A stretch of 63,668 nt of DNA, counting the filler, from Octopus bimaculoides (taxonomy: Eukaryota): assembly GCF_001194135.2 (NCBI RefSeq). It is 7 parts of 6 records of this genome, joined end to end, with 100 filler letters (N's around TTAATTAATTAA, not from the genome) between each part and the next. Parts side by side here need not be neighbours in the genome. Positions count along the whole stretch, not along the records: positions 12,899 to 29,943 come from NC_068989.1; 6 more parts are not named here. One strand, 5' to 3'. The notes beneath the pieces are model-generated. The model did not search any database, had not been told where the DNA came from, and saw only the letters and a program-made list of their open reading frames with translations. Positions 13,201-30,670 of the stretch are shown here, piece by piece. Position 1 is the first letter of the stretch; the number at the start of each line of letters is the position of its first letter. The position numbers were made by a program, and so were the translations under genes.

Positions 13201-13548
13201 TGTATGCATGTGTATGTGTGTGTGTACACACGCACACACACACATACAACATTTTACAACCAATAAAATGCACTCATACACCTGCTATATATGCACACAC
13301 ATACACACACTTACGCATACACACATATGCACACACTCCCTAGCCTTGCTTCTGTCAGCTTCCCAGATAGCCAGACGCCACCAACTTCTTGTCCAGCAGC
13401 TCTGGTGCCGCTGAAACGCAAATTTTACCTCTAACTACACCGTGTGACCTGCCTTGACCACTTTTCCAGTAGCCATCTTGGACTTTCTGTTTTCTTCCAT
13501 TGTAAAACTAGTCGCATAGAGCTCTTCTAAATAATAACAATAACAATG

Positions 13549-13607
<59 letters not shown>

Positions 13608-14796
13608 TATAATAATAACAATAAAAATAATAATAATCATGGTGATGATGATGATGAGTAGGAGGAGGAGGAGGAGGAGGAGATTAAGCTGATTTTTTTT
13701 AATATTAAGAGATAGATACCTGTTTTATGACTGGTTTTAATAATATAAAATGAACATCTGTACTAAACATCTCTTACTTATGAAAAGTTTTAAATATTGA
13801 ATTATGTGAATTAAAGATGAAAATTTTTCGTTCAAGTTAATTGCCAGTCAATTAAATGAGCAATATTATTAATTATGCTACGATCGTAGAATCGGTATTG
13901 CTGTAGTCAAAGTAGTTTCTAGCATGTAATTATTTTCTTTTGCGTCATAAATTTTAAATATCAGTGTCATTTCCTTCGCTTACATTTTTCCAGGAATAAT
14001 AAAAACGATCGTAACCATCCCAAATTTGTGGTCGGAAGCAAAAGTTAGACATCAGTATTGATTATACTATTGCTATAAATCTTCTCGCAACGAAAGGTTA
14101 ACAATATAAACTGAATGAGATCTCAACAGTGCAGTAAATATATCGAACCCGTTTTCCCACAAGCTGCTAAAGTTGAATAGGTAATCCACGCGTTATTTCT
14201 TGCCTCTCAGAAATTTAAGTTCAAATACCACCACCCCTGTAAATATTCCGTATTCCACCGTGTGGGTTGTGACCATGCTCCCTAGTCCTATAACACCGAG
14301 TTCTATGTGAATCTTGACAGGTGTTGGAATAAAATTCAAATATAAGTTATATGAGTAGTCATATAATTCCGTTCACATCCAGAATTCTTTTGGGGATATT
14401 CAAATGGGCTAAGACGGCGAGCTGGCAGAATCGTTAGCATGCCGAGCGAAATACTGAGCAGCATTTCGTCGGCCGTTACGTTCTGAGTTCAAATTCCACC
14501 GACGTCGACTTTCGGGGTCGATAAATTAAGTACCAGTTACTCACCGGAGTCGATGTAATCGACTTGATTCCTTTGTTTGTCCTTATTTGTTCTCTCTATG
14601 TCTAGCCACTTGTGGGCAATAAAAAAATAAGAATCCTTAGCTCGCCAAGCGAAATGCTCTGTCTTTACATTCGAAGTTCAAAATCCTCTGAGTCCGACTT
14701 TGCTCTTCAGCCTTACGGGGTCAGTAGAATAAGTTCCAGGTGTCGCTAAAATAAGTTCCAGGGGTCAAAATAATCGACTTAACCCATCTTACTGAC

Positions 14797-16251: not shown

Positions 16252-16664
16252 ATGTGTATATTCCATTGGTTATATGTATATGTATATGTATGTATACACA
16301 CACACATTAATATATATATGATACAGGTAAACATTTTACAGATACTATATATAGTCGCTGCGTGGGTGTGTGGTAAGAAGCTTGTTTCCCAACTACATGG
16401 TTCCGGGTTCGGTTCCATTGCATAGCACCTTGGATAAGTATCTTCTACTATATTCTCGGGTCGACCAAAGCCTTGCTATAGGATCTGGTCAACGGAAACT
16501 TACAGAAGCCCGTGGTATATANNNNNNNNNNNNNNNNNNNNNNNNNNNNNNNNNNNNNNNNNNNNNNNNNNNNNNNNNNNNNNNNNNNNNNNNNNNNNNN
16601 NNNNNNNNNNNNNNNNNNNNNNNNNNNNNNNNNNNNNNNNNNNNNNNNNNNNNNNNNNNNNNNN

Positions 16665-16699
<35 letters not shown>

Positions 16700-17081
16700 T
16701 CAAATGATCGAGGTGAAGGAGGAAGAAAGTGAGTTTCAAGCAATCCATATGAAGCAATAATGGTTTATCAGGAACAATAATGGTTTATTGGGGCAGAAAT
16801 GCTGTGGATTTTTTCTGTATGGAATGTAAATTTCATTTAATCAAGATACCATTTTCCCTGAAGAGAAGGCTGCGATTCACGCCTCGCTTGTATACTTAAC
16901 ACTCCTGCGGTCCCGCTCGCTATGAAACTAATGTAGCCTGGATTTTATCTATTCCGTTTGTTAAATCTTGGATATATATTCATAAACAAAAGTACAAAAT
17001 AGTACCAGCAATGCTAGAAACTCATAATAAAAATTGTTGAGAGCGTGCGCTTGACGAGACGAGTTATGCTTAACCCTAGAC

Positions 17082-17155
17082 ACAGTAAGGTTCACTGACG
17101 AGAACTGAGATGCAATGCATAAGTGTTCGAAATCACGTGATGTGATCATATCTGC
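17082..17155 (+). ncRNA. Type I hammerhead ribozyme motif, copy 1 (intact core, non-permissive AUG at the cleavage triplet)
   Basis: GTTCA (stem I 5') - CTGACGA (17095-17101) - stem II GAAC/GTTC (17102-17105/17125-17128) - GAAA (17129-17132) - palindromic helix III ATCACGTGAT (17132-17141) - G17 - TGATC (stem I 3'), plus distal CAG/CTG pairing. Confidence 0.8.
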
Positions 17156-17438
17156 TACCTCACTTGAATGCTTATCTCACTACGGTAAGGAGTTTCGCTT
17201 CGCGTCTTCCGTCAACTTACGATAGTGCTTTTGGTGGATAATTGGATCGTTTTTGATTCTTGTTTTTAGCAATACTGGTACTATTTTGTACCGTTGTTTA
17301 TAGATTTGCCTTTAGGTTTTAATTGCTAATGGGCCACCTACATTATTTATAGTATACATTTCCATTGTTTTGACACAGCGCACGCTTTCTGCGGTTTTTC
17401 TGATGAGTTGACGAGGCGAGTTATGTTTAACCCTAGGC

Positions 17439-17512
17439 GCAGTAAGATCCAGTGACGAGAACTAAAATGCATTGTATCAGAGTTCGAAATCACGTGATAT
17501 GGGTAAATCTGC
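17439..17512 (+). ncRNA. Type I hammerhead ribozyme motif, copy 2 (AUA cleavage site, C3-to-G core change)
   Basis: ATCCA - GTGACGA (17452-17458) - stem II GAACT/AGTTC (17459-17463/17481-17485) - GAAA (17486-17489) - ATCACGTGAT (17489-17498) - A17 (17499) - TGGGT, plus distal GCAG/CTGC pairing. Confidence 0.8.
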
Positions 17513-18381
17513 TACCTCAATTGGGTGCTTGCCTCATTACGGTAAGGAGCTTTCTCGCTTCTTCTCTTTCATCAACAAGACAGTGTTTTTTTTTGTGGCT
17601 AATTGAGTCGTTTTTTACTCTTGTTTCTAGCAATACTGGTACCATTTTGTACCCTTGTTTATAAACTTTCCTTCAGGACTATGAAATTCCATTCAATGAA
17701 ATATATTTGTTATACCGACGTTTATAGAAGGAGACACAGATGCAAGATGGGAACGAACCCAGGAACAAGTAGCTGAAAGGATAACTTTGTTAACCATAGA
17801 GATATACCAGCATCTTATGCATATGGATAGATATATCAAGAATCTATTAAGATGCAGTAAATTGAATTGATGACAATGGATTTTATCAAGACCAGATGCG
17901 TCTTATTACAGCCACTTTAGGAAACTAGAATAATTATCTCTGTGAAATTGGAGTGTCTTTGTGGAAATCAATATTTCCACTTTGTCTTGATGTCAACGAC
18001 AAACAAGGCCTTACCACTGGATGTTTTTGTTCAGCTTCGATTACCTATCCATCTATCTGCCTATCTTTCTTACCGAAACGCTATCTGTCTATCAAGGAAT
18101 GCATACAGAGAATAACAATATGTATTGTGTCTTGCATCTTTTACTTGCTTCAGGCATTGGATTGCGGTTATGCTTGGGTCACGCTTTCAAGAGCTTCAGT
18201 CGAACGAATTACTCCCACCACTTTGTTAATGTCTGGAGTTTATTCTACCGGTCTCTTGTCTCTTTGCGGAACTGTTGAGTTAGGAAGACGTAAAGAAAGC
18301 AAAACCGGGGAACAGGCACAAACACAGACGCACACGCACTCGCTCACGCGCACACACATACATGCATGTTTGTGTATGTAC

Positions 18382-18431
<50 letters not shown>

Positions 18432-18683
18432 ATGTATGTATGTATATGCATGCATATGTACAACACACACACATACACGACAGACTTCTTTCAGTTTCCG
18501 TCTACCAAATCCACTCAAAAGACATTGGTTGGCTCAAGGCTGTACAAGATGACATCTGCTTGATGTATCACAAAGTGGGAATGAACCCGAAACTCTGTGG
18601 TGGAGAAGCAATCTCCTGACTACACAGCCATGCCTGTGCCTGTATATGTATGTATGTGTGTGTGTGTGTATGTGCGTGTGTAT

Positions 18684-18887
<204 letters not shown>

Positions 18888-20103: not shown

Positions 20104-20244
20104 CTGCAAAAACATCACAAGAACTGCTACTCACAATTTGATGTTCCTGTTCGTCGGAGAGATGTGATCAAGATTCTTGATCGCAACTGTCCAACCAACG
20201 GGAGCGTGAAACTCTGAGTTGCAGCTTCTGTGATGTTTTTGCAG
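20104..20244. repeat. Imperfect ~140-bp fold-back repeat (MITE-like family); one arm recurs at ~60430-60505
   Basis: The left arm ctgcaaaaacatcacaagaactgctactca pairs with the right arm tgagttgcagcttctgtgatgtttttgcag. The centre is tgtgatcaag-att-cttgatcgca. Confidence 0.75.
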
Positions 20245-20609
20245 TTTTAATAGTACTCGACATTTGAGCACTATTTTTCCCACCCTGCTTTGCATTTATG
20301 TGCATACTCGTGTATACACACACACACACACANNNNNNNNNNNNNNNNNNNNNNNNNNNNNNNNNNNNNNNNNNNNNNNNNNNNNNNNNNNNNNNNNNNN
20401 NNNNNNNNNNNNNNNNNNNNNNNNNNNNNNNNNNNNNNNNNNNNNNNNNNNNNNNNNNNNNNNNNNNNNNNNNNNNNNNNNNNNNNNNNNNNNNNNNNNN
20501 NNNNNNNNNNNNNNNNNNNNNNNNNNNNNNNNNNNNNNNNNNNNNACATACATACATACATACATAGAGAGAGAAAGTGATAGAGAGAGAGAGAAAGAAA
20601 GAGAGAGAG

Positions 20610-22032: not shown

Positions 22033-22099
<67 letters not shown>

Positions 22100-23289: not shown

Positions 23290-23560
23290 ATATTATAACA
23301 TTTATTGACATAATGAATTATTTCTCCACATGAGCGCCATTTCTACAGATAACTTTGAAAACCCTATTAGTCATGGAATCTGTCAATGTCTTAATAGCAG
23401 CAGGTTGGACTGCCTCTGCTGCAGATATGATAGGCGCCCATCGATGTAAATTGGCGTTCATTGGCATAAACGTCTTGTTTAATGATAGACCAAAGATTTT
23501 CAATAGGTCTGAGATCCGGAGATGCTGGCAGCAACACTATTAGCTTTTCACCCTAGTAAT
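23290..23560 (-). mobile_element. Tc1 transposase C-terminal relic
   Basis: The minus strand reads PASPDLRPIENLWSIIKQDVYANERQFTS, then after a frameshift WAPIISAAEAVQPAAIKTLTDSMTNRVFKVICRNGAHVEK*. Confidence 0.8.
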
Positions 23561-26372: not shown

Positions 26373-27254
26373 TCACATTCTGTGATGACAGAATTTGTTT
26401 ATTAAAATTTCCCTTCTTATACTTAATGTTTCTCCTTTCAAATTCTTGAAATTTATGGGGTTTAACTTTTTTTTTAATCTTAGATTTATGCTTTTTTTCG
26501 AGTATTTAGAATAGAATTTCATTATTCTTGAAAAGTAAATGCCGAAATAACACAAACATTCCTGAAAGAAAAAAATGAAAACAAAGCATATAGAACTACT
26601 TAAATAAAAACTATATACTTGAGAATTATCTTATCCCCGAGCAAACATAAATCTCTGTAAACAGAATAAGAAATGTTCTACGATGTATCAAGTTAAATAC
26701 TTTGTCAGTCATTGCAAAATATAGAAACATTTCTAAATTAATACTTGCTTGTCAAAAATGCAATATTCAAACAAAAATAAGTTAGTAGTAATGTAATATT
26801 CACAAGCTTTCCGTACTTGTTTGTCATTAACGGATTAATTAAATAGCTCGAGAAAAGATACTGATGTATCTATTTTAAGTAATTTGCATGTTCGATTTTA
26901 TGAATAGATTTCTATGTGTTGTATGATCTTGCGTAAATTTTCATTCGCTGTGTGTTCCGCGTTTACTGAGTAAGCTATCAGTCTTGGTCTATGATTAATT
27001 AAATGTCCTTGCTGGTGTACGCCACGCATGGCGAGGCGACAAGAAAGATAGACGAGGTAAACGAGAATTTCGAGTAGGTTGACTGGGAGCCCGAATAAAT
27101 TTGTTAGCCGTAGACATATATACAGGCAGAGAGAAGGACATTATGTATGTGTGTGTGTGTGTATGTCTGTATTTTAAAATGATCTTTGGGAAATTTCTTG
27201 ATATAGTCACATTATTCAAAAACAGATTTACTTCAAGGATCTAGAACAGTTTTA

Positions 27255-27467
27255 CAGGGTGTCCACAAAGTCTGGGTACATGGGGATTAACGCATACTTT
27301 AAGAAATTATTATTTTTTATATTTAATTGTTTATGTTATGATTTTATTTTCTCCATGTACTCACATGGGGGATTAACATATACTTTAAGAAATTATTTCT
27401 TACATTTAATTGTTTATGTTATTATGATTTTATTTACACAATGTACCTAGACTTTGTGGACACCCTG
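27255..27467. mobile_element. Intact 213-bp Tc1/mariner-type MITE
   Basis: Near-perfect ~26-bp TIRs CAGGGTGTCCACAAAGTCTGGGTACA / TGTACCTAGACTTTGTGGACACCCTG, a TA on both sides (27253-54, 27468-69), and an interior made of two ~85-bp direct repeats. Confidence 0.92.
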
Positions 27468-27796
27468 TATATATTGCGAAAAGCTGAGGGATAAGAGGAA
27501 ACGGCGTTGAAGCTTTGAAGAAGCTTCTACCGTTCAATATCCCAGGTAAGCCTATAGGATGGCAAGAAACTCAAATGAGGGCATCACTACCAAACTCTCT
27601 CATTCATCAAAAAGCCACCCACATAAGAATGATCATTAAAAAGTGTTACTCTGCTTTTATTTTAATCTATTTTCAATACACAACAGTCTGCAGTTACTAT
27701 AAGAGAGATCGGGTTTAGTTTAGAATAAGATTAAAATTTTGAATTTGCAAATTAGGAATTATAAAGAAAATGATGAAGACAATTCACGTATTTAGT

Positions 27797-28207
27797 TACT
27801 CTTTTACTCTTTCACTTGTTCCAGTCAATTGACTGCGGCAAGGCTGGAGCAGCGCCTTTAGTCGAGCAAATCGACCCCAGGACTTATTCTTTGTAAGCCT
27901 AGTACTTATTTTATCTACCACTTTTGCCGAACCGCTAGGTTACAGGGACGTAAACACGCCAGCATCGGTTGTCAAGCGATGCTGGGAGGACAAACACAGA
28001 CACACAAACATATATACACACATACATATATATACATATATATACATATATACGACGGACTGTTTTCAGTTTCCGACTACCAAATCCACTCACAAGGCTT
28101 TGGTCGGCCCGAGGCTATAGTAGAAGACACTTGCCCAGGGTTCCACGCAGTGGGACTGAACCCAGAACCATGTGGTTTGTAAGCAAGCTACTGACCACAC
28201 AGCCATG
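27797..28207 (-). mobile_element. SINE family A, near full-length
   Basis: Reverse-complement homolog of 36775-37182. Confidence 0.85.
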
Positions 28208-28647
28208 TTACTAAAATTTCTAGTGGAATTAATTGTATACAGTGTCATTTCAGTCTTTTTAGAAATGGACAGGAAGATGTAACCCGTGACTTAGTAATTA
28301 AACGTTTTATGGAATGAGAAATTTCCTTAAAGATAGAAATAATAAGAGTGTCAAGGAAATTCATGTAAGGTGGGTTTTTTTCCCCTTCCGTACATTCAGA
28401 GTTGGCACTTAGAGCAATAGACAGAAAAGTGGTAAAGTTTTTTTTAATATTTACAAACACAAACACATATGCATGTATGCATGCATGTATGTATGTATAT
28501 ATGTGTGTGAGTGTGTGTGCGTGTGTGAGAATGTGTGTGTATGTTCGTGTGTGTAGAAATGTGTATCTATATATATATATGTATGTATGTATATATATAA
28601 ACATCTGCATACATATATACATGTACACAATATGTGTGGGTGTATAC

Positions 28648-28683
<36 letters not shown>

Positions 28684-28684
28684 G

Positions 28685-28785
<101 letters not shown>

Positions 28786-29588: not shown

Positions 29589-29667
<79 letters not shown>

Positions 29668-30670
29668 TGATTGATAAAACTAGCTGCTCGTGAATTAAGA
29701 TCTAAGTCTCTGAGTATTCCGGAGACACGTATACTAATAGTGACAGAGTTATAGCTTTCAAACGAGAAGTACCACGCCTTTGCCAATCCAGTGTCACTCA
29801 GGTGGTATGACACGGAACCAAAAACTTGTTGAAGACACAGTTCAGCACTTTTGCATATGACACACAAACCACACACCCATCACACATACACAACCATACA
29901 CACACACGCATATGTATGTATATATATATATATATATATATATNNNNNNNNNNNNNNNNNNNNNNNNNNNNNNNNNNNNNNNNNNNNTTAATTAATTAAN
30001 NNNNNNNNNNNNNNNNNNNNNNNNNNNNNNNNNNNNNNNNNNNTTTTGTGCAGGTGGCACATGAAATGCACCATTTTGAGCGTGGCCGTTGCCAGTACTG
30101 CCTGACTGGCCTTCGTGCGGGTGACACGTAAAAGCACCCACTACACTCTCTGAGTGGTTGGCATTAGGAAGGGCATCCAGCTGTAGAAACTCTGCCAAAT
30201 TAGATTGGAGCCTGGTGTTGCCATCCGGTTTCACCAGTCCTCAGTCAAATCGTCCAACCCATGCTAGCATGGAAAGCGGACGTTAAACGACGACGACGAC
30301 GACGACCCTACCCCAACAAACCAAAACCACTTCTCTCTTTCACATTTCCCCTTTCCCATGCTTATCCCTCGCTCCCCAATTCTGTCCTCACAACCCTGCC
30401 CACTCTATCATTGCTGTCCTCTTCTCCCCCACTTCCCCTATATACTCACATTTCACTAGTCACTGCATTCCTCACCCCCACACTTTTTGCATTTATGCGA
30501 GTCCCCTAATCTCTACTCACTCACCCTTGGCAATACTCAACCATCCCCGTTTATATTCTGATCCCCATACCTTGAGGGCATAACTTGGCTCTTCATCACC
30601 ATCTCTCTCTTACTCTCTCTTGCACTCTCACCCTCTCACTCTCTTCCCCTCTCTCTAATTCTTGATCAAT

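What the first reader, a model, noticed from the sequence alone, without database searches (positions are those of the whole stretch)
17051..17680. Tandem 357-bp monomers each carrying a type I hammerhead ribozyme: a candidate cephalopod retrozyme / circRNA-producing unit
Seen in sequence: two diverged direct repeats. In both, CUGACGA/GUGACGA - stem II (GAAC(U)/(A)GUUC) - GAAA - palindromic helix III AUCACGUGAU - stem I is kept, while the stem II loop and stem I sequences differ (GUUCA/UGAUC vs AUCCA/UGGGU, distal CAG/CUG vs GCAG/CUGC). Established: tandem monomers of a few hundred nt, delimited by type I hammerheads with a weak palindromic helix III, are the architecture of metazoan non-LTR retrozymes and PLE pseudo-LTRs, whose transcripts self-cleave to monomers that can circularise. 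Inference: this is such an element in an octopus. No RT ORF is adjacent, so it would be non-autonomous. I cannot tell whether the family is already described.
Basis: partly seen in the sequence, partly recalled or inferred. Interest (0 to 1): 0.9.

Follow-up and report, generated by a model that had tools for sequence, protein, structure and literature searches.

The report
Decayed hammerhead-ribozyme retroelement insertion
This is a 751-bp insertion made of two direct copies and one inverted stub of a ~268-nt non-coding repeat carrying a hammerhead-ribozyme-like motif, arranged as Penelope-like retroelements insert; the kind is already known in animals, and both ribozyme copies here carry a disabling point change.

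Summary
The direct repeat is real: 17051-17316 and 17408-17677 are 79-80% identical. Only about 268 nt is shared. The 91 nt between the copies (17317-17407) recurs nowhere, so this is not two full 357-bp monomers.

Each copy holds a type I hammerhead-like three-way junction. The helices hold in both copies, with two compensatory pairs in helix I and a conserved 10-nt palindromic helix III.

Neither core is intact. Copy 1 has G at the cleavage-site position 17 (17142). Copy 2 has G at position 3 (17452), a change published as abolishing cleavage. Rfam's hammerhead models do not score either copy.

- an inverted, 5'-truncated copy directly upstream (16961-17033);
- a 33-nt extension beyond it (16928-16960);
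- an 8-bp direct repeat, CTATGAAA, flanking the whole 16928-17678 block.

Partial tandem, inverted stub, one-sided tail and target-site duplication together form the published insertion signature of Penelope-like elements. No RT or endonuclease remnant lies in the 17-kb piece.

Verdict: a fossil, non-autonomous, hammerhead-bearing retroelement of the retrozyme/Penelope pseudo-LTR kind. The family could not be retrieved, so copy number, consensus, activity and host remain untested.

The parts
16920..16927 (.). Left copy of the candidate 8-bp target-site duplication, CTATGAAA
   Evidence: The same octamer begins at 17679, right where copy 2 homology ends. The chance of such a match is 0.006-0.009.
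16928..16960 (-). 33-nt extension beyond the 3' end of the inverted copy; candidate Penelope-type 'tail'
   Evidence: It lies between the left duplication and the end of T-block homology. Its length fits the 30-40 bp one-sided tail of Penelope-like elements (PMC8557442, PMC11167929). Its similarity to the start of 17317-17407 is weak (p about 0.1).
16961..17033 (-). Inverted, 5'-truncated copy of the last ~70 nt of the repeat, lying head-to-head with copy 1
   Evidence: The match to 17623-17665 is 86% complementary over 43 nt. The match to 17262-17322 is 75% over 61 nt (blastn E about 1e-9). A gapped alignment extends it to 17033. It keeps the GGTAC-N6-GTAC(C/T) hairpin at 16991-17006.
17034..17050 (.). 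Junction between the inverted and direct copies, of unresolved origin
   Evidence: The sequence is TTGTTGAGAGCGTGCGC. Region 17019-17051 is a 79% inverted match to 17377-17409, but part of that rests on the near-palindrome AGCG(CA/TG)CGCT, and blastn gives only E=0.03-0.2.
17051..17316 (+). Direct copy 1 of the ~268-nt repeat
   Evidence: Searches show 80% identity to copy 2. GC is 40%.
17082..17155 (+). Hammerhead-like motif of copy 1
   Evidence: - Helix I 5' strand is 17082-85 plus 17090-94.
- CUGACGA is 17095-17101.
- Helix II is 17102-17128.
- GAA is 17129-31.
- Helix III is 17132-17141.
- Position 17 is G at 17142, which is not an allowed base.
- Helix I 3' strand is 17143-47 plus 17152-55.
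Of 21 pairs, 18 are standard.
17277..17292 (+). Conserved 3' hairpin, GGUAC-N6-GUACC; also at 17638-17653 and, inverted, at 16991-17006
   Evidence: This is the best-conserved block shared by all three copies (family I2). A role in RT recognition is inference only.
17317..17407 (+). 91-nt segment X between the two direct copies, found only here
   Evidence: It has no significant similarity to the sequence after copy 2 or after the inverted copy. It holds an orphan CUGAUGA box at 17400-17406, which gives only a spurious descriptor hit.
17408..17678 (+). Direct copy 2 of the repeat, ending at the right duplication
17439..17512 (+). Hammerhead-like motif of copy 2
   Evidence: The core box reads GUGACGA at 17452-17458, so position 3 is G rather than C. 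Position 17 is A at 17499, so cleavage would fall at 17499|17500. All 21 pairs are standard.
17679..17686 (.). Right copy of the candidate target-site duplication, CTATGAAA

Best explanation
The block 16928-17678 is one old insertion of a short, non-coding, hammerhead-bearing retroelement. The element belongs to the animal non-LTR retrozyme / Penelope pseudo-LTR kind and was put in place by Penelope-like (RT + GIY-YIG) machinery supplied in trans.

Layout: 8-bp target duplication, inverted 5'-truncated copy with a 33-nt tail, direct copy 1, 91-nt segment, direct copy 2, 8-bp target duplication.

In a working family member the mechanism would run as follows.
1. A multimeric transcript folds a type I hammerhead in each unit: helix I of 5 bp plus an internal loop and 3-4 bp, a bipartite helix II, and a helix III too weak to fold alone.
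2. Two units pair through the palindrome AUCACGUGAU.
3. Cleavage occurs 3' of position 17 and releases unit-length RNA.
4. A host ligase can circularise that RNA, and a Penelope RT can copy it back into DNA.

What the sequence shows: the repeat layout, the motif, the pairings, the two compensatory pairs and the flanking duplication. What is inferred from the published families: transcription, cleavage, circularisation and mobilisation.

At this locus both ribozymes are predicted to be dead (G17 in copy 1, C3G in copy 2), so it is a fossil.
For: Repeat and ribozyme motif:
- The direct repeat has blastn E about 1e-66.
- Both copies match the hammerhead descriptor with one core mismatch, and the mismatch is at a different position in each. 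Taking the canonical base at each core position from whichever copy has it gives a perfect core, although with only two copies the ancestral states are not resolved. A perfect motif occurred 0 times in 200 shuffles of the piece.
- 92.9% of pair cells are standard, against 24-55% when the partners are slid.
- Helix I has two compensatory pairs (G-C/A-U and U-A/C-G). P(>=2) is about 0.04 under simulated neutral change.
- The G10.1-C11.1 pair is present.
- The 10-nt palindromic helix III is identical in both copies. It is unstable as a hairpin and -14.9 kcal/mol as a duplex. This is the published trait of metazoan type I hammerheads that act as dimers (PMC4209133, PMC7229834).

Insertion architecture:
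- An inverted 5'-truncated copy abuts the 5' end.
- A 33-nt extension is present at one end only.
- An 8-bp flanking duplication has p about 0.006-0.009.
- Together these form the Penelope-like insertion signature described in PMC8557442 (section 6) and explained in PMC11167929.

Context:
- There is no coding capacity. The longest stop-free stretch is 125 aa, and Pfam gives 0 families.
- GC is 39-40% and the spacing is 357 nt, inside the published ranges (PMC7229834).
Against: - Neither copy has an intact core.
- The core boxes (19 of 21 identical) are not clearly better conserved than the repeat as a whole (79%).
- Rfam hammerhead models give nothing at E<=10.
- With one mismatch allowed, about 10% of shuffled 17-kb pieces give a hit.
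- The helices were defined on these same two sequences, which biases the pair counts.
- The predicted minimum-energy fold pairs part of the core box with the helix III strand, and the hammerhead fold is 4-6 kcal/mol above it.
- The 357-nt unit is not unusually structured (z=+0.7).
- The two direct copies differ by about 20% and by compensatory pairs. That is awkward for a single insertion unless the template was a heterogeneous multimer.
- No relative was found outside the locus, so 'family' rests on three copies at one site.
Confidence: 0.6

Rival explanations
1. The block is an internally deleted autonomous Penelope-like element: two pseudo-LTRs of about 268 nt, each with its hammerhead, around a 91-nt remnant of the internal region. 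It is not a member of a dedicated short retrozyme family that makes circRNA.
For: The layout 'repeat - 91 unique nt - repeat' is exactly pLTR-internal-pLTR. The inverted stub, tail and flanking duplication are Penelope features (PMC8557442). The 2026 preprint 10.64898/2026.07.22.740005 places retrozymes next to pLTRs in phylogenies, so the two are hard to separate from one locus.
Against: The 91 nt and the rest of the piece show no RT or GIY-YIG similarity. Canonical metazoan Penelope hammerheads are usually minimal, with almost no helix III and an extra base before 10.1 (PMC4209133). This motif has a 3-bp helix III with a palindromic tetraloop and no extra base, which is more like the canonical retrozyme type.
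Confidence: 0.2
2. The hammerhead resemblance is chance. The ~268-nt repeat is an ordinary interspersed element, such as a SINE whose GTTCGAAATC is a pol III B box. Three copies landed close together, and no ribozyme ever existed.
For: With one core mismatch allowed, the descriptor hits about 10% of shuffled pieces. Rfam gives no hammerhead hit. GTTCGAAATC fits the B-box consensus GGTTCGANNCC at most positions (read from the sequence). The unit is SINE-sized. SINEs make up 11.6% of an octopus genome (PMC13282606), if that is the host.
Against: ARAGORN and Rfam find no tRNA-like head. There is no A box at the expected place and no A-rich or microsatellite tail. The real tRNA-SINE-like repeats in this piece look quite different. 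Three copies lie within 720 bp and none elsewhere in 17 kb, and they are bracketed by one 8-bp duplication. Two compensatory pairs and a conserved 10-nt palindrome sit exactly where helices I and III belong.
Confidence: 0.12
3. The block is a purely local rearrangement, a 357-bp tandem duplication plus a small inverted duplication. There is no mobile family, and the hammerhead-like motif is either incidental or inherited from a single older element.
For: No copy exists outside this locus in the 17-kb piece or in any collection searched.
Against: The collections searched hold essentially no animal genomes, so absence there says little. A tandem duplication would make copy 2 continue into a second copy of the 91-nt segment, and it does not. 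The 8-bp duplication flanks the whole block. The compensatory differences point to source copies that diverged under structural constraint.
Confidence: 0.06

Closest known systems
Metazoan non-LTR retrozymes (Cervera & de la Pena 2020, PMC7229834), in particular the Mytilus galloprovincialis repeats of ~350-390 bp
   Same: It shares a type I hammerhead inside short, AT-rich, non-coding direct repeats of a few hundred nt. The 357-nt spacing falls in the mussel range. [quoted passage not shown] There is no LTR, PBS or PPT, and the flanking duplication is longer than 4 bp.
   Different: Only 1.75 units are present, and 91 nt of the unit is unconfirmed as part of the element. Both cores are mutated. 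Helix II is long and bipartite (4-5 bp, internal loop, 4 bp, triloop) instead of 4 bp plus a small loop. The unit RNA is not predicted to be highly self-paired. Expression and circularity are untested.
Pseudo-LTRs of Penelope-like elements and their insertion architecture (PMC8557442, PMC4209133, PMC11167929)
   Same: It shares the partial tandem, an inverted 5'-truncated copy at the 5' end, a 30-40-nt tail at one end only, a target-site duplication, and a hammerhead motif within the repeated part.
   Different: There is no RT/GIY-YIG ORF anywhere in 17 kb. The hammerhead is of the canonical rather than the 'minimal' Penelope type. Homology of the tail to the sequence after the 3' end of copy 1 is weak.
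Schistosome Sm-alpha / Sj-alpha SINE-like elements and newt satellite 2 hammerheads (from my own knowledge of Ferbeyre 1998, Laha 2000, Epstein & Gall 1987, Forster 1988; not re-read here)
   Same: These are ~330-nt repeats, both dispersed and tandem, that carry a type I hammerhead. Its weak helix III favours cleavage as a double hammerhead in multimeric transcripts.
   Different: There is no sequence similarity that Rfam's hammerhead model, built on such sequences, could detect. Pol III A and B boxes are not demonstrated here; there is only a B-box-like string that overlaps helix II and GAAA.

Membership tests
Hammerhead ribozyme, type I | Intact catalytic core: C3 U4 G5 A6 N7 G8 A9, G12 A13 A14, A15.1-U16.1, H17 | tested here: not met
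   Copy 1 has G17 at 17142, and copy 2 has G3 at 17452. C3G abolishes cleavage (PMC11167929). Each copy fails at a different position, so taking the canonical base from either copy gives a complete core, but the ancestral state cannot be resolved from two copies. These copies are therefore filed as hammerhead-derived relics, not as active ribozymes.
Hammerhead ribozyme, type I | Three helices around the core, with helix I open-ended and a G10.1-C11.1 pair | tested here: met
   There are 21 pairs in helices I, II and III. 18 of 21 (copy 1) and 21 of 21 (copy 2) are standard, G10.1-C11.1 is present, and slid controls give 24-55% paired.
Hammerhead ribozyme, type I | Covariation supporting the helices | tested here: inconclusive
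   Helix I has two compensatory pairs, with P about 0.04 under neutral simulation. Only two sequences are available, and the structure was derived from them.
Hammerhead ribozyme, type I | Match to the curated covariance models (Rfam Hammerhead_1 and its clan) | tested here: not met
   There is no hammerhead hit at E<=10 on the piece, on 901 nt, or on 101-nt windows around each motif.
Hammerhead ribozyme, type I | Site-specific self-cleavage | not testable with these tools
   This needs in vitro transcription of the copies and of a family consensus.
Metazoan non-LTR retrozyme | Type I hammerhead in tandem repeats with 150-450-bp monomers, from dimers to multimers | tested here: inconclusive
   There are two direct copies with 357-361 spacing, but only ~268 nt is shared and the 91-nt spacer is unique. 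TRF calls no array.
Metazoan non-LTR retrozyme | Low GC (<45-50%), no LTR/PBS/PPT, no coding capacity | tested here: met
   GC is 39-40%, although the background is 35% so this discriminates little. There are no ORFs and no Pfam hits.
Metazoan non-LTR retrozyme | Target-site duplication, when present, longer than 4 bp | tested here: met
   CTATGAAA lies at 16920-27 and 17679-86, with p about 0.006-0.009.
Metazoan non-LTR retrozyme | Unit RNA predicted to be stable and highly self-paired | tested here: not met
   The circular fold of 17143-17499 is -73.5 kcal/mol, against -77.0 +/- 5.1 for shuffles (z=+0.7). This copy is decayed and includes the doubtful 91 nt.
Metazoan non-LTR retrozyme | Multi-copy family in the genome, with abundant linear and circular transcripts | not testable with these tools
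   No animal genome or RNA-seq was available. Pattern scans of the metagenome, viral and prokaryote collections gave only chance hits.
Penelope-like element insertion | Partial tandem forming pseudo-LTRs, plus an adjacent inverted 5'-truncated copy | tested here: met
   compared with PMC8557442 section 6.
Penelope-like element insertion | 30-40-bp tail at one end only | tested here: inconclusive
   A 33-nt extension (16928-16960) lies between the T-block homology and the duplication, and none is present at the copy 2 end. Its similarity to the sequence after copy 1's 3' end is not significant.
Penelope-like element insertion | ORF with a telomerase-like RT and a GIY-YIG endonuclease | tested here: not met
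   Pfam gives 0 families on all stop-free segments of >=40 aa in the 17-kb piece. If Penelope-related, the element is non-autonomous.
tRNA-derived SINE | tRNA-like head with A and B boxes, and a LINE-type or simple-repeat 3' tail | tested here: not met
   ARAGORN finds 0 tRNAs and Rfam gives no tRNA hit. Only a B-box-like string is present, and there is no tail. The SINE-like repeats elsewhere in the piece are unrelated.

The most novel reading that the evidence does not exclude
This is a decayed copy of a still-active retrozyme family that has not been described. The family would yield abundant ~360-nt circRNAs.
Probability: 0.12. Interest if true: 0.5.

Novelty: new member of a known kind. 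Interest (0 to 1): 0.3.

Why it matters
Hammerhead-bearing short retroelements are already documented in many animal phyla, including a bivalve mollusc, so another one does not change the picture. Two points give it modest value.

First, no paper in the searchable library links hammerhead ribozymes or retrozymes to cephalopods. If the host is confirmed, this is a first pointer to such a family there. Cephalopods are of interest for RNA biology.

Second, this one locus combines a retrozyme-type hammerhead repeat with the full Penelope insertion signature: inverted stub, one-sided tail and flanking duplication. That is direct structural support for the recent proposal that retrozymes are mobilised by, and derive from, Penelope-like elements.

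Tried and rejected
- **Rfam scans.** I ran four scans at E<=10 on the whole piece, on 901 nt and on two 101-nt windows. None gave a hammerhead, another ribozyme or a tRNA. The many sub-threshold miRNA hits (mir-297, mir-3149, mir-466) are microsatellite artefacts.
- **Pattern scans for relatives.** The ribozyme pattern found nothing in the metagenome contigs. The 17-mer hit one viral contig (L001) that has no CUGANGA upstream. The 3'-block pattern hit one metagenome contig (L002) and nothing in the prokaryote genomes. Neither hit extends beyond the pattern, so both are chance.
- **Fishing for other copies through spurious ORFs.** The word-index protein search found nothing. The exhaustive HMMER search found only P0001 (E=8.6e-4). 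That protein is a translated 156-nt satellite from assembly GCA_028583405.1 with no DNA similarity to this element, so it was rejected.
- **Looking up the neighbouring 199-aa ORF to identify the source contig.** It is not on record.
- **Alternative helix III register in copy 1.** AUCAC/GUGAU with loop GUGAU would cleave after C17147. It gives an allowed cleavage triplet but destroys helix I, and copy 2 lacks it, so it was rejected.
- **The orphan CUGAUGA at 17400.** It forms no credible hammerhead.
- **A second 91-nt segment after copy 2 or after the inverted copy.** There is no significant similarity.
- **The 33-nt inverted match 17019-17051 / 17377-17409.** It is partly explained by a near-palindrome and by continuation of the inverted copy, and I left it unresolved.
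Full report
**Observation**

The sequence at 17051-17680 holds two direct copies of one element, at 17051-17316 and 17408-17677. Start-to-start spacing is 357-361 nt and identity is 79-80% (repeat finder; MAFFT; blastn E about 1e-66). Similarity stops sharply at 17316 and at 17677. The 91 nt between the copies (17317-17407) has no significant similarity to what follows copy 2 or to what follows the inverted copy described below. The shared unit is therefore about 268 nt, and the array is 1.75 units, not two 357-bp monomers. Tandem Repeats Finder does not report it. No other copy lies in the 17-kb piece.

**The ribozyme motif**

Both copies contain, in register, the elements of a type I hammerhead. 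In copy 1:
- The helix I 5' strand is 17082-85 and 17090-94.
- CUGACGA is 17095-17101.
- Helix II is 17102-17128. It has GAAC(U)/(A)GUUC with G10.1-C11.1, then an internal loop and a distal AUGC/GCAU hairpin.
- GAA is 17129-31.
- Helix III is A17132-U17141, that is AUC-ACGU-GAU.
- Position 17 is 17142.
- The helix I 3' strand is 17143-47 and 17152-55.

Copy 2 is the same shifted by 357 nt.

Of 21 proposed pairs, 18 are standard in copy 1 and all 21 in copy 2. Overall 92.9% of pair cells are standard, against 24-55% when partners are slid by 1-3 columns. Helix I carries two compensatory double changes (G-C to A-U, U-A to C-G). The four one-sided changes all keep or restore pairing in copy 2. 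In a simulation that scatters the 15 observed differences at random, two or more compensated pairs occur about 4% of the time.

The helix III sequence AUCACGUGAU is a perfect 10-nt palindrome and is identical in both copies. Alone it does not fold (dG 0). As a self-duplex it gives -14.9 kcal/mol. That is the published hallmark of metazoan type I hammerheads that cleave as dimers in multimeric transcripts (PMC4209133; PMC7229834).

**Weaknesses of the motif**

- Neither core is intact. Copy 1 has G at position 17, where only A, C or U is allowed. Copy 2 reads GUGACGA, that is C3 to G, a change shown to abolish cleavage unless G8 is also changed (PMC11167929).
- My descriptor finds no perfect hammerhead in the piece. 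With one core mismatch allowed it finds the two copies plus one spurious site at 17400. Dinucleotide shuffles give 0.12 such hits per piece, and 10% of shuffles have at least one. None of 200 shuffles gave a perfect motif.
- The two defects are at different positions, so a perfect common ancestor is possible but cannot be proved from two copies.
- The core boxes (19 of 21 identical) are not clearly better conserved than the whole repeat (79%).
- Rfam 15 reports no hammerhead at E<=10, even on 101-nt windows. The 15-19-nt extension of helix II and the core changes probably explain this, but it remains a failed test.
- The predicted minimum-energy fold keeps helices I and II but pairs part of the core box with the helix III strand. 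The hammerhead fold lies 4-6 kcal/mol above it.

**Surroundings**

Directly upstream, on the opposite strand, lies a third partial copy. Region 16961-17033 matches the last ~70 nt of the unit: 86% over 43 nt to copy 2 and 75% over 61 nt to copy 1. It includes a small hairpin, GGUAC-N6-GUAC(C/U), that all three copies keep. This copy is 5'-truncated and lies head-to-head with copy 1.

The octamer CTATGAAA occurs at 16920-16927. It occurs again at 17679-17686, beginning exactly where copy 2 homology ends. The chance of such a match is 0.006-0.009. This bounds one 751-bp insertion, 16928-17678. It also leaves a 33-nt extension (16928-16960) beyond the 3' end of the inverted copy that the copy 2 end lacks.

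Four features together are the published signature of Penelope-like element insertions (PMC8557442, section 6):
- a partial tandem;
- an inverted 5'-truncated copy at the 5' end;
- a 30-40-nt tail at one end only;
- a target duplication.

In vitro work explains this signature. The Penelope enzyme nicks and extends both DNA strands, and it starts reverse transcription at two internal sites 30-40 nt apart (PMC11167929).

**Coding capacity**

No stop-free stretch in the piece exceeds 125 aa. All 144 non-repetitive segments of 40 aa or more gave no Pfam family at E<=0.1.

**Rival readings**

A tRNA-derived SINE was considered, because GTTCGAAATC (helix II 3' strand plus GAAA) resembles a pol III B box and the unit is SINE-sized. 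ARAGORN and Rfam find no tRNA-like head, and there is no A box or simple-repeat tail. The SINE-like repeats that do occur in this piece are unrelated. Three independent insertions within 720 bp, bracketed by one duplication, are unlikely.

A purely local duplication does not explain the missing second spacer, the flanking duplication or the compensatory differences.

An internally deleted autonomous Penelope element (pLTR - 91 nt - pLTR) cannot be separated from a dedicated retrozyme family on one locus. The 2026 preprint 10.64898/2026.07.22.740005 argues that the two are one lineage anyway.

**An unresolved tension**

A single insertion should give identical copies. These differ by about 20% and by compensated pairs. 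Either the template was a heterogeneous multimeric transcript, as reported for mussel retrozyme RNAs (PMC7229834), or the compensations are the 4% neutral outcome.

**Comparison with known families**

The spacing (357 nt), GC content (39-40%, against 35% for the piece), non-coding nature, helix III type and duplication longer than 4 bp all fit metazoan non-LTR retrozymes, notably the 350-390-bp mussel repeats (PMC7229834). The fit fails on predicted self-pairing: the circular fold of 17143-17499 has z=+0.7. Copy number and expression could not be tested.

**Search for relatives**

Pattern scans of the metagenome, viral and prokaryote collections returned only chance matches. Attempts to reach other copies through spurious ORFs found nothing related. 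The only hint is a dispersed SINE-like repeat in the piece that I recall from octopus sequence, which is a lead and not a test. Octopus genomes do hold active Penelope families (PMC13282606). No paper in the library links hammerheads or retrozymes to cephalopods.

**Verdict**

This is a genuine, old, Penelope-type insertion of a short hammerhead-bearing non-autonomous retroelement. It is a new member of a known kind, and at this locus it is almost certainly catalytically dead. I put about 0.8 on the motif descending from a real hammerhead (0.6 for the best explanation plus 0.2 for the deleted-Penelope rival). Interest is modest.

Noticed in passing
window 16363-16521 (-), 18454-18632 (+), 28028-28207 (+): Three copies, 76-78% identical, of a ~160-180-nt dispersed repeat, each abutting a TG/TA/TATG microsatellite. 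Read on the opposite strand it starts with a tRNA-like stretch (GGCTGTGTGGTAAG...GGTTCCGGGTTCAGTCCC), so it looks like a tRNA-derived SINE, although ARAGORN and Rfam do not call it. It is unrelated to the hammerhead element.
   Followed up: partly
window 23321-23552 (-): Two adjacent reading-frame fragments look by eye like the C-terminal end of a Tc1/mariner transposase broken by a frameshift (...LPASPDLRPIENLWSIIKQDVY... and ...IKTLTDSMTNRVFKVICRNGAHVEK). Pfam gave no hit at E<=0.1.
   Followed up: partly
window 18682-18886, 28564-28782, 13530-13637, 22033-22099, 29589-29676: Long microsatellites are present: (ATAG)51, (TA)110, (AAT)36, (TAG)22 and (GATA)22. They and the TG/CA tracts produce dozens of sub-threshold Rfam 'miRNA' matches (mir-297, mir-3149, mir-466), which are artefacts.
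   Followed up: yes
window about 16520-16660 and about 20330-20540: Runs of N (assembly gaps) sit inside or next to TG/AC microsatellites. They appear as X runs in the ORF translations.
   Followed up: no
window 20104-20244 and 27253-27469: Two self-complementary (foldback) stretches of 141 nt at 78% and 217 nt at 68%. The second also contains an 86-nt unit repeated twice (27278-27446). They may be MITE-like or hairpin repeats.
   Followed up: no
window 17400-17406 and 17051-17057 / 17408-17414: An intact CUGAUGA box lies just upstream of copy 2, and each copy begins with TGACGAG, the same heptamer as in its hammerhead core box. This may be a trace of an old internal duplication of the ribozyme's 5' half. 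No second hammerhead can be folded from it.
   Followed up: partly
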